This document shows, in pieces, positions 19,769 through 64,000 of a stretch of DNA of 64,000 nucleotides. Made by a program: the position numbers and the translations under genes. The stretch covers positions 372,001-436,000 of the IMG/VR virus record IMGVR_UViG_3300032782_000001. One strand, written 5' to 3'. Numbering within the stretch: position 1 is the stretch's first letter; each line of letters starts with the position of its first letter. The notes below the pieces were generated by a model. The model searched no databases. It was not told the origin of the DNA and was given only the letters and a program-made list of their open reading frames with translations.

Positions 19769-20083
19769 TCAAACGGTTGTGTAATTACCGGGAATATATA
19801 TTCCACTCACATGATCTCGCATGGCTTCAGCATGCTTGCGCCCTTCTTCAAGAACTTCCATCATGTCGGCATGGAAAGCTGCTTCGTCGAAGGCAACGTT
19901 ATGCTCTCGCCAATGACGATTGCACATAGATCTGAACATGTCTTTCTCCGCATCCCCTGATGGGTTGCAAATAGGACAATGGTCAGATGGAGGCTCGAAT
20001 GGCAATTCGAGCTGCACGGGAAGCGTGTCGTATCGCTTCATGAGCATCCAGATGAAGATCCGCATTGCATGCACAAATAACAA
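19769..20083 (-). CDS. Hypothetical protein with CPIC...C..H
   Basis: Follows nrdJ; putative Zn ligands. Start uncertain. Confidence 0.4.
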   Translation of the reverse strand: MLFVHAMRIFIWMLMKRYDTLPVQLELPFEPPSDHCPICNPSGDAEKDMFRSMCNRHWREHNVAFDEAAFHADMMEVLEEGRKHAEAMRDHVSGIYIPGNYTTV

Positions 20084-24708: not shown

Positions 24709-24909
24709 TCAGCAAGCAGTAAAAGCTCCCCCTACAGGGACATTCCAACTGAATCCGCATTTGACGCATTTGTACATGACGTTATGTGCGCCGTCTTGAC
24801 TCAATTTGTAAACATTCCGACTATCACAGGCCTGACCGCGAGTGAGTTGATCAGTTCCTCGCTTGCATGCCACAAGGACGATAGGATGTTCTTCGTTTTG
24901 GTCATTCAT
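24709..24909 (-). CDS. Small Zn-ribbon protein
   Basis: C...C...YKCVKCGFSW; start at ATG 24909. Confidence 0.55.
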   Translation of the reverse strand: MNDQNEEHPIVLVACKRGTDQLTRGQACDSRNVYKLSQDGAHNVMYKCVKCGFSWNVPVGGAFTAC

Positions 24910-25249
24910 TGGGAATACCCCTTCCAGCAAACTCTACTGCAACACGTGCTCGAATGCGCGTTTCAGCTTGCATCAGAGTTTCTGAAGGAAACATTCTGAG
25001 CGTAGAAGTCTGAGCGATTTGTTTAATAATGTCAAAGTCCGACTTGACGATCGTCAGGGGTTCCTTCTTAAGTGGGGGAACCCATAGTTTTACAATTTCA
25101 GGCCCAGAAGCAGGAGAAGTTACCAGAACTTGAAGTTTCCCTAACATCAGGGAAATTATTACCGACGGGAAAGTTGTAACTGCAAATTCTTGGGTAGCAG
25201 GACGGATTCGGCGCCCAGCCGCAAAGCGGTCGCCAATAATCCCATCCAT
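24902..25249 (-). CDS. Hypothetical protein
   Basis: 115 aa, packed in the operon. Confidence 0.55.
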   Translation of the reverse strand: MDGIIGDRFAAGRRIRPATQEFAVTTFPSVIISLMLGKLQVLVTSPASGPEIVKLWVPPLKKEPLTIVKSDFDIIKQIAQTSTLRMFPSETLMQAETRIRARVAVEFAGRGIPNE

Positions 25250-25250
25250 A

Positions 25251-26522
25251 TCAGATCCAAGCGCGGAAGACTGAATCAGCGATCTTATGAATCACTGAAG
25301 CCGTTTGGCCCTGACCATCAGCCTCCTCAGCCCCGGCTCCACCACCCTTTTCTTCCTTGGCAAGCTCAGCTTCGAGGGTCTTACCCTCTTTCTTAAGCTC
25401 ACCTTCAAGTTTCTTGATGAGATTTTGGATCCTCGGCTCCCCGTCTTTCTTGTCCTTGCGAGCCTTGAGAATCGTGCGATAATCGCGACCGCGTTGATAG
25501 TCAATACCCTTTTGGGCCTTCGCCTTCTCGATTCCTCGAACCTCCTTCGGAGTGGTTCCAGAGAAGAACTCCTCCTTGAGAGCTTCGTAGTCACCTGGCG
25601 TCATATTGGTGTCGATGAATTTCCAGATTTCATTTAGAAGCTTCTTGCGAAGATCACCGAGATAAGCCGCCCACTTGAGGTTGACTTTGCCTTGAATCTT
25701 TTTCTCGTCTAGTCCAGGATTCTTCTTCTTAATCTCCGGGCCCCATTTGGCGTAGAAGTCATTCCAAACTTCAGGATAGTTCTCCCGAAGAAAAGACGAC
25801 TGGTTCATATTCTCTTTGATATCAGAACCGAACCCGCCAACGTTGTGCTCGAAAACCATATCGAACACAGCGCCGGTATCTTTGGACAACGAGGCTTTAA
25901 GATCAGGGAGATAGTCGTCGATGAGGTCGTAAAACTCCTTGAGCGCGGCCTGATCATCAAGGGCCTTTCCGAGCATCGTCTCATCGGATGTCGGCATGCG
26001 GGCCTCACCACCTTCGGCGCCGCCTCCTCCCTCAGGACGAGTCCCGAAGGCGTCATCAACCGACTTTTCTTTCTTCTTACGACGCTGAGTATCGATGGAT
26101 TTCGAGATTGATTTCGTACGTAAATTGGAATAGATCGCATCAAGTGCGTCTTGCCAATTATCGAAATCCTTGCTGAAGTCCCAAGGCTTCGCCCCATGCT
26201 CCTTGCCGCGTGGAACCCTGACTTTTTCTCCGGTCTCTTCGTCGACCTCGTCAACGAACTTGGTGCCGGTGGTCAGATAACTCAGGAAATCCTGAATCGT
26301 GTCCATCGCCCGTTGATCGTCGTTCTGGTTTTGACGGCGAGAGATGGCCATCATCTTGTGGCCGATTGACGCCGGCTGTACGTCAATATTCTGACCCGGG
26401 AATTGGTTTTTCAGGAGGTTAATGATCGCCCTCCCGAAGCCAGTCTCGACATCAGCATAGAGCTGGAACATAGCCAGGATCAGCCTGATCGAAGGCGCGA
26501 CTCGAGATACAAAGGGTCCCAT
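25251..26522 (-). CDS. Hypothetical protein with a sigma-70 region-2-like segment
   Basis: AMDTIQDFLSYL...WDF...IYSNLRTKSISKSIDTQRRKKKEKSVDD resembles the sigma-2 D..QD...N...D..RR...S.D pattern; Lys/Glu-rich tail. Confidence 0.4.
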   Translation of the reverse strand: MGPFVSRVAPSIRLILAMFQLYADVETGFGRAIINLLKNQFPGQNIDVQPASIGHKMMAISRRQNQNDDQRAMDTIQDFLSYLTTGTKFVDEVDEETGEKVRVPRGKEHGAKPWDFSKDFDNWQDALDAIYSNLRTKSISKSIDTQRRKKKEKSVDDAFGTRPEGGGGAEGGEARMPTSDETMLGKALDDQAALKEFYDLIDDYLPDLKASLSKDTGAVFDMVFEHNVGGFGSDIKENMNQSSFLRENYPEVWNDFYAKWGPEIKKKNPGLDEKKIQGKVNLKWAAYLGDLRKKLLNEIWKFIDTNMTPGDYEALKEEFFSGTTPKEVRGIEKAKAQKGIDYQRGRDYRTILKARKDKKDGEPRIQNLIKKLEGELKKEGKTLEAELAKEEKGGGAGAEEADGQGQTASVIHKIADSVFRAWI

Positions 26523-26548: not shown

Positions 26549-28192
26549 CTAGGTCGAGGAGCCGCCGCCTTGTCGGATGTCACGGATAACGCGCCGGTTG
26601 ATGGCCGCGTTCACCCTTTCCAAAGAGACCCCCAACTTCAGGCTGATCTCGTCGGCTTCCATGCCTGCATCGTACATGAAACACACAAGGTCGGTCCTTG
26701 CAGCAACACACGGACCAAAAGTTTCGTCACCAATGATTTGCTCTGGCGTACATCCGTGCTTGTCACAAACATCACGCATGGCCTGGTCGACGTCCACAAG
26801 AGCAAGACGCCTGGTGATCTCGTCCCTGTGAGCACGGAGTTTGGCCATTGCAGAAGCCCGTAAGCGATTCACCTTCTGCAATGGCTTACCGCTGATCCCT
26901 GCATAGTCCTTGGCACTCATCTCTCCGAGGTCGAGAGACCGAATGACGGCTTCCTCGTCAGGCGTCAATCCAGCAGACGCCATGACTGCTGCCAGATCCT
27001 TACGGATCTCGACCTGACTGAATTGATTTTGCGAACCGGGATCACGAAACACCCGTTGACGACCCGTAGGGTCGTCAACATCTTCAGATTCCCAAGCAAC
27101 AGTCTCAGAGTCTCCAATTTCCGGAGAGAGACCGTTATTGAAAACCATAGTGGGCATATCGTCGCCACGCGAGATACGCTTGAAACTGTTGACGACTTCA
27201 TGATCGATGATCAGTTCTGCGTACTTGAGAAGACCTGCATCGATACCCGGTGCCACCCCATTCGGACCAGGAGGTCGCATGATGTGAAGAGGAGTGAATG
27301 CCGCATCCCCGGTTGACCGGAGCATATTGGTCTTTTTCCAGCCACGAAGCATGGGCTTCAGCTGCCGGTCATTCCATCGAAGCCTCGCGACTTTATCACG
27401 AATGGAAGGATGATTCCAGCCTCCGGGCTTGCTCCTATCCAAAGCGAGAGAAATGCCACGATCCTTGAGAAGTTTCAGTCCGTGTTCACAAGCCGGACAT
27501 GCAACGATCACGTGGTTATTGTAATGGCTAGCACAATAACCACGGCTGAAATGACGCCGAGGACAAGCGTTGCCAGCAGCATCAACATATGAACACACCG
27601 GCCCGTGGGGCTTGGGGTCCTCCACAACCTTGATACATTCATGCTCAGTGAGCTCAGCAGGCTTCAACCGACCCTGCCTATACATGGATTCAAGGATCCC
27701 GTAGGAACCGGCGGGATATCCAAGGAGCCTGAGGACATCATCACTGCTGATCGTGTGTCCTTGAATGGAATAGTAATAACGGGCGTAGTCGAATTTGGCA
27801 AAATCCAAAATATCAGACACACGCCAAAGTGAATCCGGACAAGACCGGACGCACGTCTTGGCCTTCATGCAGTGCTTGTTCTGGCACAGCGTAGGGCCAA
27901 CGTTGACAGGCAACAACGAACCAATGAAGACAATCGAAGCTCCGCCAAGCATGCGTTGAGCTTGAGACCGATCCACGATCTCATGGCGAAGATGCTTGAA
28001 AAACCACCGACCAATGAAGTCTTTGGTCAGGAGGCGAACCCGCACGTCCTGCGCGGCATCGGGGATCCTCTCCTTATCACGCTTGAACTTGCGCGAGACC
28101 TTCGAGAGGATCCACGCATGCCACTGACTCAGAAATGACTGGTTCGTCGGGATCGCGACAGTCTGATATTGCATGTAGCCTCCACGCGGCAA
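26549..28192 (-). CDS. Sigma-factor-like protein with a large Cys-rich insert and a C-terminal DnaA domain-IV-like HTH
   Basis: N-terminal RIPDAAQDVRVRLL (sigma-2-like); LTPDEEAVIRSLDLGEMSAKDYAGISGKPLQKVNRLRASAMAKLR (sigma-4-like); VCDKHGCTPEQIIG...VAARTDLV...ISLKLGVSLERV. Confidence 0.55.
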   Translation of the reverse strand: MPRGGYMQYQTVAIPTNQSFLSQWHAWILSKVSRKFKRDKERIPDAAQDVRVRLLTKDFIGRWFFKHLRHEIVDRSQAQRMLGGASIVFIGSLLPVNVGPTLCQNKHCMKAKTCVRSCPDSLWRVSDILDFAKFDYARYYYSIQGHTISSDDVLRLLGYPAGSYGILESMYRQGRLKPAELTEHECIKVVEDPKPHGPVCSYVDAAGNACPRRHFSRGYCASHYNNHVIVACPACEHGLKLLKDRGISLALDRSKPGGWNHPSIRDKVARLRWNDRQLKPMLRGWKKTNMLRSTGDAAFTPLHIMRPPGPNGVAPGIDAGLLKYAELIIDHEVVNSFKRISRGDDMPTMVFNNGLSPEIGDSETVAWESEDVDDPTGRQRVFRDPGSQNQFSQVEIRKDLAAVMASAGLTPDEEAVIRSLDLGEMSAKDYAGISGKPLQKVNRLRASAMAKLRAHRDEITRRLALVDVDQAMRDVCDKHGCTPEQIIGDETFGPCVAARTDLVCFMYDAGMEADEISLKLGVSLERVNAAINRRVIRDIRQGGGSST

Positions 28193-28301
28193 TTGCCTTG
28201 CCTATCGGAGTAACTGCGGGATGTCCACATCGCCTGCGGACGAAGGAACCACTTTAACATGCCTTATTCTCTAAGTCAACTATTTCGTGATCGGCGATGG
28301 T

Positions 28302-29132
28302 TTAGCTGGAAGAGCCGACCACCGGGAGAAAAGCCGACGGATTGGGAAGGATTGGTGGAGCCGGCGCGAGCAGCTGCATGACTACGGCATCGGAAAACGG
28401 AACGGGGTGATCGGTGAGCCATGTGACGGCTTTCTCTACGCGAACCTTGGATGAATTTCGGCCTTCAAGACAATTGCCCGCGGTATAAGCCGACAATCTC
28501 TCAAGGACCGGTAGATTCCGGCACACGGTGAAAGAGCTCGAAGCCATCCGAAGTCCGGCGCGGAAGCAGTTGCGCCTATCCGAAATCAGATCTTCTCCAC
28601 TCCACCCCCGACTCGTGTCCTTAGTGAACTCGTACCCCTCCTTCGTGAGGGCAATACGCAAGTCAGTTTTGCCAGTTGCGGGGTTTGGTTTTCCGAGCTG
28701 AACTTGAACCATGCACCAAGAACGGCCTCCGTCCCCTCGAGCTTGAGGACCGAGGTTCAAATCTACGTCCTTGCGATAACCACTTTCGAACAGAGCGATA
28801 GATGCCAAGAGAGCCGCGGTGCGGGCTCGACCAAATTTTCCAGGAAAAAGAGGTTTCTCCTGGGGATCATAAGCCACAGCAATGATGGATTCCGCAATTT
28901 CTCCGTAACGAACGATTCCTTCGTCGTGAGTTTCTTTCGCGCCTGCAATGAAACTACGACCTGGCGGTGACCAAGACGCCATGCGATCCACCATCCACTG
29001 GCGAAGATCGGAAATGTCAGGTGAAGCACTTGCGGGTCGGCTAAAAAGCATCGCCACAAGAGCCAAGAAGCCGGCAAAAAGCCGCGCGCGATTCTTCTGC
29101 ATTGCAATCTCCTGTCGCTGCGAAAAAGTCAA
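28302..29132 (-). CDS. Secreted lysozyme-fold/lytic transglycosylase-like protein
   Basis: Signal peptide (FLALVAMLFSRPASA); LASIALFESGY (catalytic Glu-Ser), GDGGRSWCMVQ, LSAYTAG. Confidence 0.6.
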   Translation of the reverse strand: MTFSQRQEIAMQKNRARLFAGFLALVAMLFSRPASASPDISDLRQWMVDRMASWSPPGRSFIAGAKETHDEGIVRYGEIAESIIAVAYDPQEKPLFPGKFGRARTAALLASIALFESGYRKDVDLNLGPQARGDGGRSWCMVQVQLGKPNPATGKTDLRIALTKEGYEFTKDTSRGWSGEDLISDRRNCFRAGLRMASSSFTVCRNLPVLERLSAYTAGNCLEGRNSSKVRVEKAVTWLTDHPVPFSDAVVMQLLAPAPPILPNPSAFLPVVGSSS

Positions 29133-29270: not shown

Positions 29271-29693
29271 TTACACATCACGTGTTGAACGTCGGGTTTT
29301 TCCTGACGGTTCTGGTGAACTTCGATGGTCCTCTACGGGACTTAATTCAAGATATTGAGAGAATCCCATTATTGATGATTTCTGAGTGGAATAAATGCAC
29401 TTCCTCCTCAAAACTTTGTAGGGCCCATCTATGGTCCGAACACGCTTCGGATCTTTGGGATTCCGAAGAGCCATTCTGAATTCGATTTCGGTACCTTCTG
29501 GGATCAGAGGCATGTCAGCTCTGAACTCAAAATGCACCGGAACATCGAGGAACACCAGAAAAGTTCTTACGAGACCTGATCCACACGCTTCTTCTAATGC
29601 CATTGCACTTTCTGAATCCGACTCCGCCGTTTCCACTGCTTGCTCCGCTGCTGGATGCTCACTACTTGTCGAAAGAACGAAGAAAAGGATCAA
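29271..29693 (-). CDS. Hypothetical protein
   Basis: 140-aa ORF; start uncertain. Confidence 0.45.
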   Translation of the reverse strand: MILFFVLSTSSEHPAAEQAVETAESDSESAMALEEACGSGLVRTFLVFLDVPVHFEFRADMPLIPEGTEIEFRMALRNPKDPKRVRTIDGPYKVLRRKCIYSTQKSSIMGFSQYLELSPVEDHRSSPEPSGKTRRSTRDV

Positions 29694-29990: not shown

Positions 29991-30785
29991 GTGACTGCAA
30001 AGAATTCGAAAGCAAAAAGAACCGTTAGCGTAGCAGAGCGCGAGGAAGCGCTCAAGAAAGCCTTGGATGAGGCTACTCAACGCATGGCCACAGGCAAGAA
30101 GGAACGGGAGTATTTTCGACCCCTCTTGGAAGAATTGGTTCGCAATAATGCAATTCCTGTGGAGCTATTGCAGTTTGTTCCGGTTCGAGCCTCGGAAGCT
30201 GGTAAAACAAGGTTTGACCAGCTTTATGACGCGGCCATGTTGTTGGCATTCCCGGGGTATAGGAAGGAAACTCTTCAAAGGCTTTTAGCTCCTGGTGAAT
30301 CTGTAAAAACTGGCACGAAGATTTGGAGAGTGACATTTCCTGAGAAATTTGGTCTATCGCATGTGCTGATTCGAGCAGAATCTTTCCAAGAAGCTTTTGC
30401 TCTCGGCTGCGATTATGCTTGTCGAGTTTCATTACGAATGAACAAACGAATACCAGTCGATTTGACAGTCCGTGTCATGATTGTGACGGAAAGGGCTCTG
30501 CGCCGGAAACTCGATATGAGATGGGCGAATCGGGTACAAAGGCGTAAGCAACTTCAGCTCGAAGCTCGTATATATACTCCAAAAGAACTTGCTGGAGCCA
30601 GAATGGCTGCCATCGGACATCCGAAAGATCCGAAGAGAAGCTTGGCTAGATATGTAGAAGCAAAAGATCTGCAGAGTATTTTGAAATCAAAAGGACTCAC
30701 CAAGGTTTCGGCTGTTGAGGCAGAAATCCCGAAGAAAGAACTCGTCATTGATACCGGTCCAGGGATTCCAAAGATTCGTGGGTAA
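29991..30785 (+). CDS. Hypothetical basic protein upstream of purZ
   Basis: 264-aa ORF co-oriented with purZ. Confidence 0.65.
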   Translation: MTAKNSKAKRTVSVAEREEALKKALDEATQRMATGKKEREYFRPLLEELVRNNAIPVELLQFVPVRASEAGKTRFDQLYDAAMLLAFPGYRKETLQRLLAPGESVKTGTKIWRVTFPEKFGLSHVLIRAESFQEAFALGCDYACRVSLRMNKRIPVDLTVRVMIVTERALRRKLDMRWANRVQRRKQLQLEARIYTPKELAGARMAAIGHPKDPKRSLARYVEAKDLQSILKSKGLTKVSAVEAEIPKKELVIDTGPGIPKIRG

Positions 30786-57842: not shown

Positions 57843-57894
57843 ATCTCCGGATACGGCGGACGGGGCCGGACTTGTCGCCCGGCCCCGCGGCCCG

Positions 57895-58155
57895 TCACTC
57901 GGGCAGAACGGCCAGGGCGGCGCGGAAGAGGGCCGGGCGGCCGGTCATGAAGACCCAGGGCGCCCCGTCTTCCTCGTCGCCTTGACGGAACAGGGCGACG
58001 CAGGAGTTGCCCCGGGCGACGAGGCCAACCGCGTTCCCCTTGAGGTCAGGGCCGGCGTGCCCCTGGTTGACGTTGATCTTGGGGTCACCCGAGACCTTCA
58101 CTTGGTACTCGCGACCCGAGAACACGAACGAACCCTCGAAGGACCATTTGCTCAT
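57895..58155 (-). CDS. Small early-type hypothetical protein
   Basis: ATG 58155, 8 nt after the promoter motif; 86 aa. Confidence 0.7.
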   Translation of the reverse strand: MSKWSFEGSFVFSGREYQVKVSGDPKINVNQGHAGPDLKGNAVGLVARGNSCVALFRQGDEEDGAPWVFMTGRPALFRAALAVLPE

Positions 58156-58207
58156 GGGTTGCAATACGGCGAGGGCCGCCAGGTTTCCCCAGCGGCCCTC
58201 GGTCCGT

Positions 58208-58435
58208 CTAGCAGCGCTCCATGCGGCGCGCCCACCGCTCGTAGTCCTCGACCTGCTCCTCCGTCATCTTGGGGACGAGAGGAGTCCGGGAGCCAGACTC
58301 GTCCTCGTACTCGAGCGTGTCGCCGTGCGAGGCCATGTTCGGGCTGACGCATTGCCCGATGGGTGCGTGCTTGACGAGCCGGGTCAGGGGCTTGGCCGTG
58401 CGGTCTGCGTCGAGACGTGCCTTCTTCGTGTCCAT
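58208..58435 (-). CDS. Small hypothetical protein, paralogue of 60439-60627
   Basis: GGAGGTG RBS plus promoter motif; KARLDADRTAKP...VKHAPIGQCV...LEYEDE. Confidence 0.75.
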   Translation of the reverse strand: MDTKKARLDADRTAKPLTRLVKHAPIGQCVSPNMASHGDTLEYEDESGSRTPLVPKMTEEQVEDYERWARRMERC

Positions 58436-58506
58436 CGTCGTCACCTCCGACCTGGAATACGACAAGAGGGACCGGACTTGCGCCCGGTCCCCTGGGTCCT
58501 GGTGGG

Positions 58507-58725
58507 CTATTCGCCCTTGGCCGCTTTCCTTCCTGCTTCGGTGACCCTGATGTTGCCTTCCGCGTCCTCTTCGAGCATGCCGCGGCGCAGCAATGCTTCG
58601 TGCGTCACGATGTTCTGGTGGTGCGTCGGGCGTCGCATGCCGATCTTGGTCTTTTGACCCTTGTTGCTGTCTTCGACCCCGACGCACCATTTGAGATCTT
58701 CGAGCATCCGCTGGCTGAGCTTCAT
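58507..58725 (-). CDS. Small winged-helix-like hypothetical protein
   Basis: RBS plus promoter motif; EALLRRGMLE...IRVTEAGRKA. Confidence 0.7.
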   Translation of the reverse strand: MKLSQRMLEDLKWCVGVEDSNKGQKTKIGMRRPTHHQNIVTHEALLRRGMLEEDAEGNIRVTEAGRKAAKGE

Positions 58726-58774
58726 CCCGTCACCTCCGGGGCAGAATACGCCCCGGAGCGCGGAATTTGCGGCT

Positions 58775-59011
58775 TTAGGGCACTTCCATCCGGACGGTGA
58801 TTTGGTCGTCCTTCCCTTCCCATCCGTCCGGGTGCGCGTCGTAGAAGCCATCCCGGACTTCGAGGTTGCCCACGAGGACGCCCGACTCGTCCTGCTCGGT
58901 GTGGAATTCCCCGACCGCCGTATGCCACGCCACGATGTTCTTAGCGCGTCGGATCGCTTCGTCCGACGTCATGGTGTCCGGCTTCTCGATCCCGATGAAG
59001 ACCATTTCCAT
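58775..59011 (-). CDS. Small hypothetical protein
   Basis: RBS plus promoter motif; 78 aa. Confidence 0.7.
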   Translation of the reverse strand: MEMVFIGIEKPDTMTSDEAIRRAKNIVAWHTAVGEFHTEQDESGVLVGNLEVRDGFYDAHPDGWEGKDDQITVRMEVP

Positions 59012-59062
59012 CTCGTCACCTCCAGCCAGGAATACGGCCGGAGGTGCGAGATTTACAGGCCT

Positions 59063-59278
59063 TCAGGCTGCGAACCGGGTTGCTTCCTCGGCGAAGACCG
59101 AGAGAACGTCGGCCGCTTCCTCGAGTTCGGTCTCGAGGAAATCGACCTGTGCCTGGTTGTATTCCAAGTCCTCGTAGTCGGTGTAGCCCTCCGCGTCCGT
59201 GGACGCTGCGTGAGCCGCCTCGTACGCATCCCCGATGGCCATTCCGAGCAGCGAATCCCTGGCGATCACCTTCTCCAT
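59063..59278 (-). CDS. Small acidic hypothetical protein
   Basis: RBS plus promoter motif; ATG 59278. Confidence 0.7.
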   Translation of the reverse strand: MEKVIARDSLLGMAIGDAYEAAHAASTDAEGYTDYEDLEYNQAQVDFLETELEEAADVLSVFAEEATRFAA

Positions 59279-59364
59279 TGTCGTCACCTCCGACCAGGAA
59301 TACGACGGAGAACGCAGGATTTACAAGTCTGAAGCGGCGCGCGGCGGATTTCTGCTCTGCCCGG

Positions 59365-59436
59365 AGGATCCGGCGGGATTCGAACCCGCGACCATGGGGT
59401 TAAAAGCCCCTAGCTCTACCCCTGAGCTACGGATCC
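59365..59436 (-). tRNA. tRNA-Lys (anticodon UUU)
   Basis: Cloverleaf: acceptor GGATCCG/CGGATCC, D arm GCTC-AGGGGTA-GAGC, anticodon loop CT-TTT-AA, T arm GCGGG-TTCGAAT-CCCGC. One A-A mismatch at the top of the anticodon stem; no encoded CCA. Confidence 0.93.
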
Positions 59437-59438
59437 AA

Positions 59439-59454
59439 TGTTTCACGTGAAAAC
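59439..59454. promoter_or_regulatory. parS-like site
   Basis: TGTTTCACGTGAAAAC versus consensus TGTTTCACGTGAAACA (14/16); intergenic. Confidence 0.5.
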
Positions 59455-59457
59455 ATC

Positions 59458-59487
59458 GGGACGGCGGGTGTAGTGACCCGCCGTCCC
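59458..59487. terminator. 12-bp GC hairpin after the 59499-59684 gene
   Basis: gggacggcgggt-gtagtg-acccgccgtccc. Confidence 0.55.
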
Positions 59488-59498
59488 TTGGGGTTGTG

Positions 59499-59684
59499 TC
59501 AGCCCACGCCGTAGACCGCCATGTGCTCGATCCACGGATGGACGCGGACCCCACGCTTGGTCGGGGGCGGCGGTTCCGTGGCCCATGCCGCGTACGCCTT
59601 GCAGTCTTCGCACTCCCCGCAAGGCTCCGGCTCGCCCGTGCAGACCTTGGAATCCTCGACCGGCGCATTGAACCTCGTGTTCAT
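59499..59684 (-). CDS. Small Cys-containing protein
   Basis: RBS plus promoter motif; C...PCGECEDC. Confidence 0.7.
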   Translation of the reverse strand: MNTRFNAPVEDSKVCTGEPEPCGECEDCKAYAAWATEPPPPTKRGVRVHPWIEHMAVYGVG

Positions 59685-59726
59685 CGTCATCACCTCCGAC
59701 CATGAATACGGCCGGAGGCGACGGAT

Positions 59727-59999
59727 TTACACCTCGCGGATTTGGTCTCGCGCCTCGCGCTTGTGGAACTGGCGACGCACCTTGCCCACCAGCTGCTTGA
59801 CGCGGTGCGTCGACCGACCACCAGTAGCGGCAGTGCTGTAGCGGTCGAGGTGGCCGTCGCGGAAGGTCGCGCAGATCTCCGAGCCGAAGTGGCCGGCTTG
59901 GAAGCGTTGACCGATCGTCATCTTCGGATGGTTGCGCGACGGCTCCGAGAGCCACTTCGTGTACCGCATCGTGGGAACCTTGCGCGTCGTCCTTGCCAT
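59727..59999 (-). CDS. Small basic hypothetical protein
   Basis: RBS plus promoter motif; ATG 59999. Confidence 0.7.
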   Translation of the reverse strand: MARTTRKVPTMRYTKWLSEPSRNHPKMTIGQRFQAGHFGSEICATFRDGHLDRYSTAATGGRSTHRVKQLVGKVRRQFHKREARDQIREV

Positions 60000-60004
60000 C
60001 TCGA

Positions 60005-60193
60005 TCACCTCCGTTTCTGAGTACGCGACCGAGAGTTGGACTTGCAACTCCAAAACACCGTCAAGTACGGGCCGACGTACGAGCGGTCTGACTTCAGGAG
60101 CTTGTTGCCCATCTTCTCGAGAAAGGCGTCAATCTCCTCGTCCGAGTCGAAGCGCTTGCTGTGCTCGTAGTCCACCCCATCCAACATTGGCAT
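60005..60193 (-). CDS. Small hypothetical protein
   Basis: RBS plus promoter motif; ATG 60193. Confidence 0.6.
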   Translation of the reverse strand: MPMLDGVDYEHSKRFDSDEEIDAFLEKMGNKLLKSDRSYVGPYLTVFWSCKSNSRSRTQKRR

Positions 60194-60255
60194 GTTGTCA
60201 CCTCCAATTTGGAATACGACGGAGAAGGCCGGACTTGCGCCCGGCCCTTGCCCGA

Positions 60256-60390
60256 TCAGCCCACAGGCCCGCGCACCTCGCAGGCGAGCCAGACCAGACC
60301 GTGCCAGACCCCCTGGCGCCGGAAGTACGCGATCCAGCCCCCGAACTCCTCCGAAACGAGCCGCGGCAACCGCACGAGACGAGAAACCAT
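60256..60390 (-). CDS. 44-aa microprotein (below the ORF-track cutoff)
   Basis: GGAGGTG RBS plus promoter motif; MVSRLVRLPRLVSEEFGGWIAYFRRQGVWHGLVWLACEVRGPVG. Confidence 0.65.
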   Translation of the reverse strand: MVSRLVRLPRLVSEEFGGWIAYFRRQGVWHGLVWLACEVRGPVG

Positions 60391-60438
60391 GTCCGCCACC
60401 TCCGGCCGAGGATACGACCGGAGGTGGCGGATTTGCGG

Positions 60439-60627
60439 TCAGGTGAGCTTGGTGCGGAGCCCGTCCTCGTCCTCGTACTCGAGGTCCGTGAGGTGCGTGT
60501 GCGGTCCGACGCACTGGCCGACGGGCACGTGCTTGACGATTCGCGTCTTCGGCTTGGCGGTCTTGTCCGCGTCGAGACGGGCCTTCTGGCAGAGCGTGTC
60601 GTAGTCGTCCAAGAGCTTCGTGTTCAT
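60439..60627 (-). CDS. Small hypothetical protein, paralogue of 58208-58435
   Basis: RBS plus promoter motif; KARLDADKTAKP...VKHVPVGQCV...LEYEDE. Confidence 0.75.
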   Translation of the reverse strand: MNTKLLDDYDTLCQKARLDADKTAKPKTRIVKHVPVGQCVGPHTHLTDLEYEDEDGLRTKLT

Positions 60628-60689
60628 CGAATCACCTCCGACTGAGAGTACGGCGGAGAGGGCCGGACTTGCGCCCGGCCCCCGGCCCT

Positions 60690-60929
60690 TCAGGGCGCCT
60701 CGACCATCAGGTCCAGAAACGCCTGGCCATCCGGCGTAAGCGCTTCGGCGTCCACGAAGCCCACAGCCGTCTGCCGGGTCCGCAAGTCGGCCGTCTGTCC
60801 CTCGGCCGTCTCGCCCACGGTGAGGCGGTCCGAGAAGAGGCCGGCCTGCGTCCCATCCGCCCAACAGACCGCGATCGTCAGGCCCAGGCCCAGGCTGTCC
60901 GCGAACACCGCCTTGTTCGTCAATTTCAT
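60690..60929 (-). CDS. Small hypothetical protein
   Basis: RBS plus promoter motif; ends ALTPDGQAFL (wHTH-like). Confidence 0.7.
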   Translation of the reverse strand: MKLTNKAVFADSLGLGLTIAVCWADGTQAGLFSDRLTVGETAEGQTADLRTRQTAVGFVDAEALTPDGQAFLDLMVEAP

Positions 60930-61024
60930 CGTCGTCACCTCCGACCAGGAATACGGCAGGACGGGCGGGATTTACACGACGCGGGCCGGGTTGTAAATCC
61001 CCCGGCCCGCGTCGTATTCGGATC

Positions 61025-61375
61025 TCAGTGGCAGCGGAGCGTAACCGTCCGGCTGCCCCACGCGCCCTGGCCGCTGCCGGGCTTCGCGTTCCAGAGCGCA
61101 CCGACCTCTCGGGTCTCGCCGTCGTTGCAGGGGGCCGCTTGCACGTGGACCGCCTTGGGCGCGGGGCGCGGCTTGGACGCCACGATCGTGATCGGGATCT
61201 CGAGGGGCGCGGGCTCGTCGTGGGCCTTCTCGGGCGCCGGTGCGGGCTTGGGCGCCTCCTGCGTGGCCACGGGCGCCGCCTTGGCCGTGGGCTCCACGAA
61301 CGTGCTTCCGAGCCAGACGCTCGCGGCCGCCGCCAGGATCCACGCGCCGATCGTCGCCATCGTCTTCTTCGTCAT
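61025..61375 (-). CDS. Small secreted or membrane-anchored Pro/Ala-rich protein
   Basis: RBS plus promoter motif; TM IGAWILAAAASVWLG; PA-rich linker; C-terminal C...C domain. Confidence 0.7.
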   Translation of the reverse strand: MTKKTMATIGAWILAAAASVWLGSTFVEPTAKAAPVATQEAPKPAPAPEKAHDEPAPLEIPITIVASKPRPAPKAVHVQAAPCNDGETREVGALWNAKPGSGQGAWGSRTVTLRCH

Positions 61376-61555
61376 GATCATCACCTCCATCCCCCGATAC
61401 GACGACGAGCCGCAGACTTCCGAACCCGGCAGGCCTATGCAAATTGTTGCAAGTTGGAAGTATTGGAGGACGGAGGGGGCTTGCGTGTCTCGTTCCAATT
61501 GCAAGACATGACGATGCCCAGACTCCGTAAATTGGAGCCCGGGCATCGTATGCGT

Positions 61556-61738
61556 TCAGCGGCAGCCGCGTGCGTTGAACCGCGGGTCTCGCTCGTGGTT
61601 CTTCTGCCACGTGGTGGGCCGCTTGGCTCCTGCGTCGCGCGGCGCGCTGGCGAGGAGCCTTTCGTAGAAGCCGGGCTCCTTGTCGTGGCAGCCTTCGGGC
61701 GGCGAGCATCGCAACGTGTCGGGTTCTTGGTCGTCCAT
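61556..61738 (-). CDS. Small hypothetical protein
   Basis: RBS plus promoter motif; ATG 61738; 60 aa. Confidence 0.55.
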   Translation of the reverse strand: MDDQEPDTLRCSPPEGCHDKEPGFYERLLASAPRDAGAKRPTTWQKNHERDPRFNARGCR

Positions 61739-61846
61739 CGCGTCACCTCCGCCCACGCATACGACGACGAGCCGCAGACTTCCGAACCCGGCAGCGGGCC
61801 GCAAATTGTGCTGTGGGTGCCGTATCACTGGTTGGAGGTGACGACA

Positions 61847-62374
61847 ATGAACCAGGACATCGACACGCAGGTTTCGGATTCTCTCTTCGGCGCGGCTCTC
61901 GTTCAGGCGGTTCTCGCGGAGCCCGAGACCACGGAGCCCTGCCCCGCGACGGCCCGCTCGGCCAAGCCCGCGGAAATCCAGCCCGCCACGGCGTACTCCA
62001 AGTCGGAGGTGACGACGATGAACCAGAACAGCTACCCGTTCCGCAGCAAGGCCCAGATCGCAGCAGCTCTCGCCGAAAGCGCGCCCTTCCGCCTCGAGTG
62101 CCTCGGCATCCTGTTCGATCGCCAGACGGCGTACGAACAGAGCTCCGAGACCACGCTCAACCGCAACCGCCAGGGCTTCATGAGCTCGCACGCCGTCCAC
62201 GGCTGCCGCATCGCCAAGAAGATGCGGGCCGGCGAGGAGCTCACCGCCGAGGATCTCGATCGCGTCGCGACGATCGTGCCGCGCTACACCCGCCAGCTCG
62301 CCGAGCACTTCCGCCACGAGGCGGTTGCGGCGAACCCGGCCCTCAAGGCGGCGGCCGCAGTCTTCGGGGTCTGA
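61847..62374 (+). CDS. Hypothetical protein with a second in-frame start at 62018
   Basis: Two promoter-plus-GGAGGTG cassettes give ATG 61847 and ATG 62018 in the same frame; both begin MNQ. Confidence 0.7.
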   Translation: MNQDIDTQVSDSLFGAALVQAVLAEPETTEPCPATARSAKPAEIQPATAYSKSEVTTMNQNSYPFRSKAQIAAALAESAPFRLECLGILFDRQTAYEQSSETTLNRNRQGFMSSHAVHGCRIAKKMRAGEELTAEDLDRVATIVPRYTRQLAEHFRHEAVAANPALKAAAAVFGV

Positions 62375-62420
62375 GATCGGACCAGGGGGGCGCGTAACCG
62401 GAAGGCCGGTACGCGCCCGG

Positions 62421-62470
62421 CCAACAGCCAAAGCACGATTCCAATATTGGAATCGTGCTTTGGCTGTTGG
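62421..62470. repeat. Perfect 50-bp palindrome (no loop)
   Basis: ccaacagccaaagcacgattccaat|attggaatcgtgctttggctgttgg. Confidence 0.95.
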
Positions 62471-62542
62471 ATTTCTGTCTCTTCGGTTTTCGTCGTCTCG
62501 TAGATCCGTCGGTCCGCGGCGTATCCCAGATCGGAGGTGACG

Positions 62543-62815
62543 ATGACGACGATCGAAAGCGCCGTTTACAAGCCGTTGGAGCAGGACGAGCAGCCGGGCA
62601 TGCCGACCTTCCGCGTGAAGGGTGTGTACGATGGGGCTCCGTTCGAAGGGGAACTGTCCGTCGAGGTCGACGGACGGGACATCGAGTGGAAGGGAACGCC
62701 TGACCCGGACGGCCCGGATTGGAACTCCGGGATGTGTGCTGCCATCATCGAGGAGCTCTGGAGTCTTCCCGCTTGGGAAGACGCCCGGTCGGAGCACGGC
62801 GAGTACATGGGCTGA
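62543..62815 (+). CDS. Small acidic hypothetical protein
   Basis: RBS plus promoter motif; ATG 62543. Confidence 0.7.
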   Translation: MTTIESAVYKPLEQDEQPGMPTFRVKGVYDGAPFEGELSVEVDGRDIEWKGTPDPDGPDWNSGMCAAIIEELWSLPAWEDARSEHGEYMG

Positions 62816-62860
62816 ACAGACATGCCGGAGGGATCTGAATGATCCCTCCGGCATGTCTGT
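62816..62860. repeat. 20-bp perfect inverted repeat with a 5-nt loop
   Basis: acagacatgccggagggatc-tgaat-gatccctccggcatgtctgt. Confidence 0.95.
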
Positions 62861-62983
62861 ATTGGGGGATCTGTAAGTTTCTCCATACCTACGTGTATAT
62901 TTACACGTTGCCTCCGGCCGTGGACGCACGGGTGACGAGTGGCGGAGCTGCCTGAAGCCGGATAAAGGGGACAGCCGCTCTTT

Positions 62984-63020
62984 ATCTATGGCAGGGATCA
63001 CGGCGATCCCTGCCATAGAT
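62984..63020. repeat. 16-bp perfect inverted repeat with a 5-nt loop
   Basis: atctatggcagggatc-acggc-gatccctgccatagat. Confidence 0.95.
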
Positions 63021-63041
63021 CTTTGGTAAAATCCTTAGGTC

Positions 63042-63368
63042 ATGACGCCGAGCCAGGTTGCCCAGTCCCTCCGCCACATCGCTTCCAAGATCGACAACTC
63101 CAAGTTGCCCGACCGGACTTTGGTCGCGCGCGACCTGCGCGGTTTGCTCACGCAGATTGCGCAGGAGCAAGAGGAGTGCGGCATGGGTGGGGTTGCCCAA
63201 CAGCAGCAGGGTCAGCAGGAGCAGCAGGCTCTTCCGAAGTCCGGCGTCGGCCAGCAGATGCTCATGGAGGCCATCAGCGAGCTTCAGGACGCTGCGAAGT
63301 CCGGCGACCACAGCAAGTTCGAGAAGGCTCTCGCCAAGGTCAACGGCGCCAAGGCGAAGGCTGGCTGA
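63042..63368 (+). CDS. Hypothetical Gln-rich helical protein
   Basis: 108 aa; LRHIASKIDN helix; QQQQGQQEQQ; flanked by related hairpins. Confidence 0.7.
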   Translation: MTPSQVAQSLRHIASKIDNSKLPDRTLVARDLRGLLTQIAQEQEECGMGGVAQQQQGQQEQQALPKSGVGQQMLMEAISELQDAAKSGDHSKFEKALAKVNGAKAKAG

Positions 63369-63420
63369 AATATCTGGCAGGGATGAAAGAAAACCCTGCC
63401 GGATACTCGGGCGTCGCGGT

Positions 63421-63531
63421 TTACGATCCGTAGTACCAGAGCGGGATGCGCTTGTAGACGCCAGGTCCCTGGATGACGTACCAGGGCTTGTTGTTGATGA
63501 TCTGCACTTCCCCATTGATCTTGTTCGGCAT
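63421..63531 (-). CDS. 36-aa microprotein (below the ORF-track cutoff)
   Basis: GGAGGTG RBS plus promoter motif; MPNKINGEVQIINNKPWYVIQGPGVYKRIPLWYYGS. Confidence 0.65.
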   Translation of the reverse strand: MPNKINGEVQIINNKPWYVIQGPGVYKRIPLWYYGS

Positions 63532-63679
63532 CGCGTCACCTCCACTGTTCGGGTACGCGGCGAATCCGTCGATCTATGGCAGTATTCAGTTTGATCTATG
63601 CCAGATAGTCGTCAAGCCGGCCAGGAACCCATTCCCAGTCGGCTTGACGGTGGCGACGACGCCAACTCTTTTAACGATT

Positions 63680-63758
63680 GCTGATAGGCGGGAGTCGAAC
63701 CCGCCGCCGCGTACCACCTGACCGGTTTCTCGCCGACGAAAGCGTTACTCCCTGTCAG
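63680..63758 (-). ncRNA. tRNA-like element (T arm plus possible acceptor stem; no canonical D or anticodon arm)
   Basis: GCGGG-TTCGACT-CCCGC T arm, followed by CTATCAG that can pair with upstream CTGACAG (6/7). Confidence 0.4.
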
Positions 63759-64000
63759 GTTCGTCAGTTACGCGACCCGAAGCCCCGGATCGTGCTATTG
63801 CGCGCGGTAGTGGTCCAGACTGCGGCCTCTTGGGTTGTCTTCCCTTGGTGAGGCGCCGCGTGTCTCTTGCACTGCCGCGCTAAGTTTTTACGTCGACTAG
63901 AGGAAGATCTCGCGGAGCTCAGACAAGACCTTCTTGCGATCCTTCGACGAGAGCTCCTTCCGCGTACCTGTTGTTCTCTTCGTAGACTTCGACCACGGAC

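What the first reader, a model, noticed from the sequence alone, without database searches (positions are those of the whole stretch)
26549..28192. Sigma-like factor with a roughly 300-aa Cys/His-rich insert and a DnaA domain-IV-like tail
Seen: a sigma-2-like N-terminus, an insert with CQNKHC...C...C, C...C...CASH and CPAC, a sigma-4-like HTH, and then a module resembling the DnaA C-terminal DNA-binding domain. I do not recognise this architecture as a named family. Inference: a candidate for reading the YGTA / A(A/G)(A/G)T-N14-CGTA promoters, perhaps linking transcription to origin binding.
Basis: partly seen in the sequence, partly recalled or inferred. Interest (0 to 1): 0.6.

Follow-up and report, generated by a model that had tools for sequence, protein, structure and literature searches.

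The report
Four-module sigma factor of huge phages
A 541-residue protein conserved in huge phages (up to about 440 kb) is a sigma-type transcription initiation factor. It has a 245-residue zinc-binding module built into its promoter-melting domain and an extra DnaA-like DNA-binding domain at its end. The architecture is real and apparently undescribed, but which promoters it reads is still unproven.

Summary
The ORF is real (window 26549-28174, minus strand; true start is the ATG at 28174, 541 aa). It lies in a complete 436-kb phage genome from a wetland metagenome.

[quoted passage not shown] It is inserted inside sigma-2, at the position of the ECF "specificity loop L3".
- Only one Cys/His set (H184, C186, C232, C235) is conserved in the family. 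The other two clusters are variable add-ons.
- The tail lacks the DnaA sequence signature and is missing from about 10% of family members.

The insert is found nowhere outside this family (37 clusters among 1.84 billion representatives). The gene is a core member of a conserved replication-gene block in all 18 related viral contigs.

It is clade-wide in the looser form GTAAAT-N14-YGTA.

Assigning that motif to this sigma is only circumstantial, because two or three other phage sigmas compete for it. The origin-binding idea has no support.

The parts
26549..28174 (-). Gene for the sigma-like protein. 541 aa from the ATG at 28174; the stop codon is 26549-26551. Residue numbers in this report count from the TTG at 28192, so M7 is the real start.
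27983..28159 (-). Sigma-2, N-terminal half (aa 12-70; helices equivalent to regions 2.1-2.2). Near-invariant D45 and invariant Q48, R53, R62-W63-F64.
   Evidence: Structure matches span aa ~10-70 plus 318-345. Invariant columns. The weak hhalign register to the phage's own sigma-2 protein is not significant.
27242..27982 (-). Family-specific insert of about 245 aa (aa 71-317) at the position of the ECF specificity loop L3. It is a compact module of two weakly Xis/MerR-like winged-helix units (aa 70-136 and 145-290) plus zinc knuckles.
   Evidence: Folds alone with pLDDT 91.0 and pTM 0.80. Best PDB match is only Z 5.4. The profile finds only this family among 1.84 billion representatives.
27488..27643 (-). 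Conserved putative zinc site H184, C186 ... C232, C235. It encloses the variable nested knuckle C200, C210, H214, C220, H223.
   Evidence: Conservation frequencies over 107 sequences. Metal binding is inferred, not tested.
27158..27241 (-). Sigma-2, C-terminal helix (aa 318-345; regions 2.3/2.4 equivalent). Conserved GIDAGLLKYA..I.NEV.N.FK.
   Evidence: The hhalign register to s221 region 2.3/2.4 is not significant.
27041..27157 (-). Sigma-2 to sigma-4 linker (aa 346-384). Low confidence in the model, acidic, and no sigma-3 domain.
   Evidence: pLDDT 51-78 in this stretch
26813..27040 (-). Sigma-4 domain (aa 385-460)
26564..26797 (-). DnaA domain-IV-like helical DNA-binding domain (aa 466-543). 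Invariant G493 and R499; near-invariant V496, A498, R533.
   Evidence: Absent from about 10 of 119 relatives.
28188..28202 (-). Conserved leader hairpin (GGCAA-loop-TTGCC in this phage), ending 4 nt before the SD GGAGG (28179-28183).
   Evidence: 16-locus alignment: 7 pairs, 5 with compensatory changes, 95.5% paired, 0 of 500 shuffles reach this. No Rfam match.
28251..28279 (-). Candidate sigma-70-type promoter for the gene, with extended -10 (TTGACT-17-TGtTAAAGT). Relatives have TGGTAnnnT in a similar place.
   Evidence: By count alone it is not above chance (4 found, 3.6 expected).
57851..64000 (.). Array of expression cassettes: CGyAARTYC-N12-CGTAT, ~8 nt, GGAGGTGA, ~6 nt, ATG. There are 12 exact sites in the window. 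It is part of a set confined to both genome ends, and is a candidate regulon of a phage sigma.

Best explanation
What it is: an ECF-like (group 4-type, no sigma-3) sigma factor encoded by a huge phage that has no detectable RNA polymerase of its own. It redirects the host core polymerase to phage promoters.

Shown:
- The two-domain sigma core, with sigma-2 split into aa 12-70 plus the helix 318-345, and sigma-4 at aa 385-460.
- A compact 245-aa module grown out of the sigma-2 loop. In ECF sigmas this loop (L3) forms the pocket for the flipped -10 nucleotide.
- One conserved His/Cys3 set in that module.
- An accessory C-terminal domain with the DnaA domain-IV fold.

Inferred:
- The gene is first transcribed from a sigma-70-type extended -10 promoter and is translationally tuned by a conserved leader hairpin next to its SD.
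- The protein binds core polymerase through sigma-2 and sigma-4.
- The L3 module sits at the upstream edge of the -10 element and contacts spacer or non-template DNA, or a partner protein.
- The tail adds a further DNA contact near or upstream of the -35 box, or acts as a regulatory lid.

Its best candidate targets are the clade-wide GTAAAT-N14-YGTA promoters, including this phage's terminal CGyAARTYC-N12-CGTAT cassettes. I put that sub-claim at only about 0.4.
For: Fold and sequence:
- Model pLDDT 90.6.
- Many sigma-2, sigma-4 and whole-sigma structural matches.
- Sigma70_r4 in 26 of 40 relatives and TIGR02937 at 28.9 bits.
- Atlas feature neighbours are all sigma-70/ECF clusters.
- Public pipelines call relatives sigma-24 or sigma-70 family.
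- The linker is about 40 aa with no sigma-3, as in ECFs (PMC8103513).

Insert:
- It lies between the two sigma-2 pieces, where L3 lies (L3 defined in bioRxiv 10.1101/381020).
- It folds on its own.

Genome context:
- No Rpb2-type polymerase in the genome.
- The family is full-length conserved, with at least 199 members.
- The gene is syntenic in all 18 viral loci.

Promoters:
- The promoter class is real and ECF-like, with a CGT-type -10.
- It is enriched in G000, G001, G002 and G009, and weakly in G003 and G004.
- It lies upstream of this gene, and of no other sigma gene, in 3 of 4 genomes.
Against: - Sigma-2 is invisible to sequence methods. Its best structural Z of 7.4 is in the range the tool warns can be a common helical arrangement.
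- Binding to RNA polymerase is not shown. The complex test gave no verdict.
- A 245-aa module in L3 could abolish, rather than modify, -10 recognition.
- The motif is absent from the region upstream of this gene in the phage's own genome.
- Other conserved phage sigmas could read the motif.
- No conserved third DNA element was found upstream of the -35 box for the tail to read.
Confidence: 0.7

Rival explanations
1. It is a sigma factor, but the GTAAAT-N14-YGTA / CGTAT cassette promoters are read by another factor. Candidates are the compact s221 (sigma-2 type, possibly together with s323, sigma-4 type, as a gp55/gp33-like pair), the sigma-70-like s402, or a host sigma. This protein would then serve a different, still unidentified and probably small promoter set.
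For: - s221 and s323 are shared by all four complete genomes and are more conserved (60-69% identity) than this protein (38-49%).
- The exact cassette motif is nearly absent from relatives that carry this sigma.
- Motif density does not track the presence of the sigma or its tail: G003 and G004 are low, and the tail-less genomes are low to moderate.
- The cassettes drive non-structural accessory genes at the genome ends, which could be early genes read by host enzyme.
Against: - The motif is not sigma-70-like. Its -10 is of the CGT/YGTA type typical of ECF-like sigmas.
- It is found upstream of this gene and not upstream of s221, s323 or s402 in G001, G003 and G004.
Confidence: 0.45
2. It couples transcription to replication. 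The DnaA-IV-like tail would tether a sigma-polymerase complex to the phage origin so that a transcript primes or opens the origin, as in transcriptional activation of the lambda or T4 origins.
For: - DnaA-IV fold of the tail.
- Invariant placement in a replication and nucleotide-metabolism block next to pol III delta and delta-prime genes.
- In this genome the block abuts a strand switch and a local GC-skew minimum.
- No canonical DnaA C-terminal domain elsewhere in the genome.
Against: - The tail does not reach the Bac_DnaA_C model. Only 13 of 96 relatives show weak hits.
- About 10% of family members lack the tail altogether.
- In G003 and G004 the gene is about 50 kb from the skew minimum.
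- No repeated box array was noticed near the gene.
Confidence: 0.1
3. The C-terminal domain and/or the insert are regulatory rather than DNA-reading. They would act as an intramolecular anti-sigma-like lid or a redox/zinc sensor that controls activity, like the fused C-terminal extensions of ECF41/42 or the Cys-rich extension of CorE2 (ECF238).
For: - No co-transcribed anti-sigma-like gene was recognised among the conserved neighbours.
- There is a conserved His/Cys3 site.
- Fused regulatory extensions are a known ECF theme (PMC7826278, PMC3426412).
- Tail-less members exist, so the core works without the tail.
Against: - The tail's fold is a DNA-binding HTH, with an invariant arginine (R499) at the start of a helix.
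- The insert's sub-units resemble DNA-binding winged helices, although weakly.
Confidence: 0.2
4. It is not a sigma factor at all. It would be a multi-HTH DNA-binding regulator or structural DNA-binding protein that merely reuses sigma-like helical domains and never joins RNA polymerase.
For: - Sigma-2 is supported by structure only, at moderate Z.
- RNAP binding is untested (one search gave no verdict).
- The protein has up to four HTH-like units.
Against: - The order sigma-2, short linker, sigma-4 is retained in one chain.
- Whole-sigma structures match across both domains (8x6g_H, 4xln_F, 9m98_F).
- D45 (near-invariant) and Q48 (invariant) sit where region 2.2 core-binding residues lie. This placement is from my own knowledge of sigma-70 and was not tested.
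- The phage lacks its own polymerase and needs sigmas.
Confidence: 0.1

Closest known systems
ECF (group 4) sigma factors, e.g. E. coli sigma-E, M. tuberculosis SigL/SigH, S. coelicolor SigR
   Same: - Sigma-2 plus sigma-4 joined by a linker under 50 aa, with no sigma-3.
- Best structural matches.
- The candidate promoters have a CGT/YGTA-type -10.
- Possible autoregulation.
   Different: - 541 aa instead of about 190.
- The roughly 10-residue specificity loop L3 is replaced by a 245-aa folded module.
- An extra DNA-binding domain follows sigma-4.
- Sigma-2 is not detectable by sequence.
- No recognisable anti-sigma partner.
ECF sigmas with fused extensions (ECF41/42 SnoaL or TPR extensions; ECF238 CorE2/SigZ Cys-rich extension; ECF52 zinc-finger fusions)
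   Same: Extra domains or Cys-rich segments fused to an ECF core, with extensions at the C-terminus.
   Different: Known extensions are regulatory, lie outside the core, and are not DnaA-IV-like. I found none with a large domain inside sigma-2 (PMC7826278, PMC8999054 listing, PMC3426412).
Sigma-70 non-conserved region (sigma-NCR) of primary sigmas
   Same: A large lineage-specific insertion within the N-terminal half of a sigma factor that leaves the sigma-2 fold intact.
   Different: Sigma-NCR lies between regions 1.2 and 2.1 (my own knowledge). Here the insertion lies between 2.2 and 2.3, at the -10 specificity loop. It also carries a zinc site and winged-helix-like units.
DnaA domain IV (Bac_DnaA_C, PF08299; PDB 1j1v, 3pvp)
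   Same: Same helical fold over about 78 residues (Z 10.6-10.9, rmsd 2.4-2.5), with an invariant Arg at the start of the helix that follows the loop.
   Different: - No AAA+ domain.
- The Pfam model is not reached.
- By my recollection of E. coli numbering, the DnaA signature (D433-H434-T435, H439) is not kept, so a DnaA box is unlikely to be the target.
- It is fused after sigma-4.
Phage sigma systems: T4 gp55/gp33, SPO1 gp28 and gp33/34, jumbo-phage 'group 2' sigmas
   Same: Phage-encoded sigmas that retarget host polymerase in a temporal cascade. T4 late transcription is coupled to replication proteins, and gp55 appears among the sigma-2 structural matches (7d7d_F Z 6.6).
   Different: Those are minimal or RpoD-like sigmas (PMC7824862). 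None is described with an L3 insert or a DnaA-like tail.
Excisionase / MerR-type winged HTH (HTH_17, Xis, RdfS, BldC) and the TniQ C-terminal domain
   Same: The two sub-units of the insert give their best, thematically consistent matches here.
   Different: Scores are weak (Z 3-5.4, TM 0.29 or less). There is no sequence-family hit, and the second unit is interrupted by the zinc element.

Membership tests
Sigma-70 family, ECF-like (group 4) | Sigma-4 domain (region 4 HTH) | tested here: met
   - PF04545 at 23.7 bits, against a cutoff of 24.1, for this protein. Over threshold or E<0.01 in 26 of 40 relatives.
- Structure: 5fgm Z 9.1 rmsd 2.0; 6dv9_F Z 9.6.
Sigma-70 family, ECF-like (group 4) | Sigma-2 domain (regions 2.1-2.4) | tested here: inconclusive
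   - Not found by Pfam or NCBIfam, nor by a profile search against PDB sequences.
- Found by structure as a split domain (2o7g_B Z 7.4 rmsd 2.0; 1h3l, 2mao, 1sig; whole sigmas Z 9-10).
- hhalign to the phage's own sigma-2 protein gives the right register but is not significant.
Sigma-70 family, ECF-like (group 4) | Only sigma-2 and sigma-4, linker under 50 residues, no sigma-3 | tested here: met
   The linker is aa 346-384 and no sigma-3 match was found. The criterion is from PMC8103513.
Sigma-70 family, ECF-like (group 4) | Binds core RNA polymerase (beta-prime clamp helices, beta flap) | not testable with these tools
   Complex prediction with E. coli beta-prime 230-345 returned 'no answer'. 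This needs biochemistry.
Sigma-70 family, ECF-like (group 4) | Cognate promoters of the AAC(-35)/CGT(-10) type, with positive autoregulation | tested here: inconclusive
   - A GTAAAT-N14-YGTA class exists.
- It precedes this gene in G001, G003 and G004 but not in G000.
- The reader of the motif is not identified.
Sigma-70 family, ECF-like (group 4) | Co-transcribed anti-sigma factor | tested here: not met
   The conserved neighbours (140, 276, 423 and 115 aa) have no Pfam, PHROG or NCBIfam match and no recognised anti-sigma domain. This feature is no longer required by the current ECF definition (PMC8103513).
DnaA (chromosomal replication initiator), domain IV | Domain IV fold | tested here: met
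   - 1j1v_A Z 10.9 and 3pvp_A Z 10.6, 78 aligned, rmsd 2.4-2.5.
- Foldseek TM by target 0.65-0.67.
- Atlas structural neighbours carry PF08299.
DnaA (chromosomal replication initiator), domain IV | Bac_DnaA_C sequence signature | tested here: not met
   No PF08299 hit for this protein at E<=10 or in the genome at E<=1. Only 13 of 96 relatives' tails give weak hits, best E 5e-5, alongside generic HTH families.
DnaA (chromosomal replication initiator), domain IV | AAA+ domain III and N-terminal domains | tested here: not met
   Absent. The rest of the protein is sigma-like.
Excisionase/MerR winged HTH (HTH_17) | Fold and family profile match for the insert sub-units | tested here: inconclusive
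   - VIA Z 3-5.4.
- Foldseek found nothing at E<2.9.
- Atlas TM 0.29 or less.
- No Pfam hit.
Zinc ribbon / zinc knuckle | Four conserved Cys/His ligands | tested here: met
   H184 99%; C186, C232 and C235 100% of 107 sequences. Geometry and metal content could not be measured here.

The most novel reading that the evidence does not exclude
A sigma factor with up to four DNA-reading heads: sigma-2, sigma-4, a winged-helix/zinc module grown out of the -10 specificity loop, and a DnaA-type domain. It would recognise an extended, multipartite promoter and, through the DnaA-like head and its fixed place among replication genes, fire transcription at the phage origin. That would make one protein both the promoter-specificity factor and the replication-licensing factor of a clade of huge phages.
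Probability: 0.1. Interest if true: 0.85.

Novelty: new variant of a known kind. Interest (0 to 1): 0.6.

Why it matters
- **A new place for a sigma insertion.** Sigma factors are among the best-studied transcription proteins, and ECF sigmas are prized as minimal, orthogonal parts. I could find no described case of a folded 245-aa module implanted exactly in loop L3, the loop that selects the flipped -10 base, nor of a DnaA-type domain after sigma-4. If the insert contacts DNA, it would show a new way to extend promoter recognition. If it does not, it would show that L3 tolerates a whole domain.
- **A handle on huge-phage gene regulation.** The gene is a syntenic core gene of a clade of 200-440 kb phages known only from metagenomes. 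It gives a concrete entry point to their otherwise unknown gene-expression programme.
- **Testable pairs.** This phage's stereotyped promoter-SD cassettes give ready-made sigma-promoter pairs that can be tested directly in vitro.

Tried and rejected
- **Known phages.** tblastn of the protein against 50,697 phage records found no match. The family is not in cultured or deposited phages.
- **RNAP binding.** Complex prediction of aa 7-350 with E. coli beta-prime 230-345 scored 0.58, but one control scored 0.41. The verdict was 'no answer', so it is not evidence either way.
- **Sigma-2 by sequence.** A profile of the N-terminal block against PDB sequences found nothing relevant. hhalign against the phage's own sigma-2 proteins gave the right register but was not significant.
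- **Insert fold.** Foldseek against PDB found nothing below E 2.9. VIA gave best Z 5.4. Atlas gave TM 0.29 or less. The insert profile against PDB sequences found nothing.
- **Tail by sequence.** The tail profile against PDB sequences found only a designed 'CAP repeat' and generic HTHs, not DnaA.
- **Third promoter element.** None was found upstream of the -35 box in 51 aligned sites.
- **Exact cassette pattern in relatives.** It is near control levels, so the exact motif does not travel with the sigma. The looser motif does.
- **Tail against motif.** The correlation using three tail-less genomes is inconclusive. Those records are 47-72% complete, and tail-bearing G003 and G004 are equally poor in sites.
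- **Origin by GC skew.** There is only a local minimum in this genome, and the signal is not consistent in relatives.
- **Z-DNA idea.** The neighbour is PurZ-like but below cutoff. There is no MazG and only a sub-threshold HD ORF.
- **Expression data.** Only two wetland DNA runs hold the sequence and there are no RNA runs.
- **Leader in Rfam.** No match.
Full report
**Setting**

The window is the last 64 kb of a complete virus record of 436,316 bp with direct terminal repeats (window = C1:372001-436000). The sequence is held by two wetland metagenome runs.

The genome carries 48 tRNA genes and a tmRNA. It also has a class II ribonucleotide reductase, pol III delta- and delta-prime-like genes, a ThyX and a PurA/PurZ-like gene. 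No Rpb2-type RNA polymerase subunit was detected. It is therefore a huge phage that must use the host polymerase.

**The observation**

The ORF at 26549-28192 (-) is open for 547 codons from a TTG. The ATG six codons later (28174) is preceded by GGAGG at a 4-nt distance. It agrees with the 541-aa database copy and with the N-termini of relatives, so the gene is 26549-28174.

The word-index search found at least 199 homologues. The best 120 are 38-61% identical, mostly over more than 94% of the length. Many lie on contigs of 200-440 kb.

**Domains**

Sequence methods see only sigma-4:
- PF04545 at aa 407-454, 23.7 bits against a cutoff of 24.1.
- TIGR02937 at 28.9 bits.
- 26 of 40 relatives hit Sigma70_r4.

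An AlphaFold model built on 107 family sequences is confident (pLDDT 90.6). An exhaustive structural comparison gives three sets of matches:

| Region | Residues | Matches |
|---|---|---|
| DnaA domain IV-like | 466-543 | 1j1v_A Z 10.9, rmsd 2.5, 78 of 94 residues; 3pvp_A Z 10.6; 1l8q; 8btg |
| Sigma-4 | 384-460 | 5fgm Z 9.1, rmsd 2.0; 6dv9_F Z 9.6 |
| Sigma-2 | ~10 to ~340 | 2o7g_B Z 7.4, rmsd 2.0, 69 aligned; 1h3l_B; 2mao; 1sig; T4 gp55 in 7d7d_F |

The sigma-2 matches align only 69-87 residues across that range, namely the N-terminal helices plus the long helix 318-345. Whole sigma factors match across both domains (8x6g_H Z 10.3; 4xln_F Z 9.2). Foldseek gives the same picture. The atlas search independently returns sigma-70/ECF clusters by language-model features and Bac_DnaA_C clusters by structure.

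**Where the insert sits**

Sigma-2 is split, so the Cys/His region (aa ~71-317) is an insertion within sigma-2. It lies between the region 2.2 helix (RWFFKHL) and the region 2.3/2.4 helix (GLLKYA..I.NEV.N.FK).

A profile comparison with the phage's own small sigma-2 protein (s221) aligns aa 30-60 with s221 54-84, and aa 323-344 with s221 97-118. This is the right order and register, but it is not significant (E 0.016 and 0.15). The two pieces are 12 residues apart in s221 and about 260 apart here.

In ECF sigmas this loop is the "specificity loop L3" (sigma-E residues 63-72). It forms the pocket for the flipped -10 master nucleotide, and its exchange swaps -10 specificity (PMC8103513; bioRxiv 10.1101/381020). 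The module therefore emerges from the part of sigma that touches the -10 element. That placement is shown by the model. What the module does there is inferred.

**The insert itself**

- It folds on its own (pLDDT 91.0, pTM 0.80).
- It has no convincing structural relative. The best hit is Z 5.4 (TniQ C-terminal domain). Then come Xis, RdfS, BldC, MerR and small-terminase HTHs at Z 3-4.7, for two sub-units at aa 70-136 and 145-290.
- Foldseek finds nothing. Atlas rows with TM 0.29 or less again lean to MerR/HTH_17.
- A profile of the insert, run against all 1.84 billion representatives, finds only 37 clusters. All are members or fragments of this same family, with the insert at the same position.
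- Conservation of the three Cys/His clusters is very uneven. H184, C186, C232 and C235 are present in 99-100% of 107 sequences. The nested C200/C210/H214/C220/H223 knuckle is in about 40-47%. The first C103-C118 cluster is in 14-21%.

I infer one structural zinc site with optional extra knuckles.

**The tail**

By sequence the tail is a generic three-helix HTH. Bac_DnaA_C is hit weakly by 13 of 96 relatives (best E 5e-5), alongside HTH_23 and sigma-4 models. It is not hit by this protein.

G493 and R499 are invariant, and V496, A498 and R533 nearly so. About 10 of 119 family members stop right after sigma-4, and one has a different tail. The tail is therefore an accessory module on an invariant core of sigma-2 with its insert plus sigma-4.

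**Genomic context**

In all 18 related IMG/VR loci the gene lies in the same block, in this order:
- a PurA/PurZ-like gene and a 264-aa gene on the other strand;
- a 140-aa gene;
- a 276-aa gene;
- this gene;
- a 423-aa gene;
- a 115-aa gene;
- pol III delta-prime-like;
- pol III delta-like.

The unnamed neighbours have no family match.

**Promoters**

An unbiased spaced-dyad search of upstream regions gave AAAT-N14-CGTA as the top signal (12 observed, 2.1 expected). The refined pattern AARTYC-N12-CGTAY occurs 51 times in the genome, against 0 for the reversed control.

The aligned sites form a stereotyped cassette: CGyAARTYC, 12 nt, CGTAT, about 8 nt, GGAGGTGA, about 6 nt, ATG. Some spacer positions are semi-conserved, and there is no conserved element further upstream.

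The sites are confined to the two GC-rich ends of the genome, 0-52 kb and 429.8-436.3 kb. The latter corresponds to window 57.85-64 kb. They drive non-structural genes such as a MoxR-like ATPase, a VWA/metallopeptidase protein and a DNA ligase.

The exact pattern is almost absent from relatives. The looser GTAAAT-N14-YGTA is enriched in several of them:

| Genome | Observed | Control |
|---|---|---|
| G000 | 21 | 3 |
| G001 | 31 | 2 |
| G002 | 26 | 2 |
| G009 | 14 | 0 |
| G003 | 7 | 1 |
| G004 | 6 | 0 |

**Who reads the promoters**

The four complete genomes share three sigma-like genes:
- s221: Sigma70_r2 only.
- s323: two sigma-4-type HTH hits only.
- This one.

Each genome also has a full but poorly conserved sigma-70-like gene (s402 in G000). 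Presence and absence therefore cannot assign the motif.

One specific pointer exists. A GTAAAy-N14-nGTA element lies 65-69 nt upstream of this gene in G001, G003 and G004, though not in G000. It is not found upstream of s221, s323 or s402, apart from one weak, distant hit at -180 before G001's s221. That fits ECF-style autoregulation but also fits a cascade. Comparing tail-less and tail-bearing genomes was inconclusive. I put the assignment at about 0.4.

**Expression of the gene**

In this phage the 110-bp gap upstream holds a sigma-70-type promoter candidate with an extended -10 (TTGACT-17-TGtTAAAGT, 28279-28251). Relatives show TGGTAnnnT motifs upstream of all three conserved sigma genes. 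This suggests early transcription by a sigma-70-type holoenzyme.

Immediately before the SD there is a conserved hairpin:
- 7 pairs, 5 of them with compensatory changes.
- 95.5% of cells paired, against 81% in shuffles (0 of 500 reach this).
- Covariation score 0.508 against 0.216.

It has no Rfam match. It is a candidate translational control element.

**Origin hypothesis**

The block abuts a strand switch and a local skew minimum in this genome. In G003 and G004 the gene is about 50 kb from the skew minimum. Together with the missing DnaA signature and the tail-less members, nothing supports origin binding beyond the fold and the neighbourhood.

**Prior knowledge**

Public pipelines already label relatives "sigma24 family" or "sigma-70 family". 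Reviews of jumbo-phage transcription describe only minimal and RpoD-like sigmas (PMC7824862). The ECF re-classification explicitly left phage sigmas out, and lists only N- or C-terminal extensions and Cys-rich linkers (PMC7826278). Searches for a DnaA-IV and sigma combination found nothing.

**Verdict**

This is a genuine, conserved, phage-specific variant of the ECF-like sigma factor with an unprecedented domain layout. Its function as a sigma is likely, at about 0.7. Its target promoters, and the roles of the two extra modules, remain open.

Noticed in passing
window 28188-28202 (-), with SD 28179-28183 and ATG 28174: A conserved stem-loop lies immediately 5' of the SD of the sigma gene in 16 related loci. 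The stem sequence changes but pairing is kept (5 of 7 pairs compensatory; 0 of 500 shuffles reach the observed pairing). There is no Rfam family for it. It is a candidate translational control element. The TTG that mechanical ORF calling takes as the start lies in its 3' arm.
   Followed up: yes
window 57851-64000 (genome 429.8-436.3 kb) and genome 0-52 kb: The GC-rich genome ends (58-66% GC against about 47%) are packed with small genes. Each has the same promoter-like box, a perfect GGAGGTGA SD and an ATG at fixed distances. There are 51 exact sites in the genome against 0 in the control. The larger ORFs include a MoxR-like ATPase, a VWA/metallopeptidase protein and a DNA ligase.
   Followed up: yes
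window 58457-58479, 60214-60236, 60648-60670 (-) and similar: In several cassettes the -35-like box (GCAAGT) sits in the loop of a GC-rich hairpin (for example GGGCCGG-GCGCAAGT-CCGGCCC), with a GNRA-like GCAA at the tip. A terminator-like hairpin of the upstream cassette may double as the -35 element, or the box may also act at the RNA level.
   Followed up: no
window 30830-32017 (+): The PurA-like gene scores best against the PurZ model (NF038379, 198 bits, full-length, below the 300-bit cutoff) and above all PurA models. It is 56-75% identical in all relatives. This hints at 2-aminoadenine (Z) DNA, which would bear on promoter recognition. However, there is no MazG-like gene and only one sub-threshold HD-domain ORF (genome 168.9 kb).
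   Followed up: partly
genome C1:175734-176399 (-) and C1:369397-370362 (-), outside the window: Two further sigma-like genes are conserved in all four complete genomes. One has only sigma-2 (221 aa) and one has only sigma-4-type HTHs (321 aa, two hits). They could act as a split sigma, analogous to T4 gp55/gp33.
   Followed up: partly
upstream of the s547, s221 and s323 genes in G001, G003, G004 and loci L009, L010, L014: A recurrent TGGTAnnnT motif (extended -10-like) lies about 100-130 nt upstream of the conserved sigma genes. In this window the counterpart is TGtTAAAGT (28251-28259). This suggests the sigma genes form an early class read by a sigma-70-type holoenzyme.
   Followed up: partly
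window 54920-56455 (-): A 511-aa ORF combines a KOW motif (aa 413-443) with a weak sigma-4-like HTH (aa 191-223). It could be a NusG/Spt5-like or other transcription-elongation factor rather than a sigma.
   Followed up: partly
window 25251-26522 (-), 24902-25249 (-), 28302-29132 (-), 29271-29693 (-), 29991-30785 (+): Five genes flank the sigma gene in nearly all relatives and have no Pfam, PHROG or NCBIfam match. The 276-aa one has a signal-peptide-like N-terminus. The 423-aa one is Lys/Glu-rich. One of them could be the missing regulator of the sigma.
   Followed up: partly
genome 97-141 kb (outside the window); window 59363-59436 (-): The phage carries 48 tRNA genes, two of them read as tRNA-SeC by ARAGORN, and a tmRNA in one cluster. 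A lone tRNA-Lys(UUU) sits among the terminal cassettes in the window.
   Followed up: no
window 20038-22857 (-): The class II (B12-dependent) ribonucleotide reductase has a C-terminal TSCPD domain and overlaps the end of the delta-like gene. It is not conserved at this position in the 18 related loci, within the 6-kb flanks examined.
   Followed up: no
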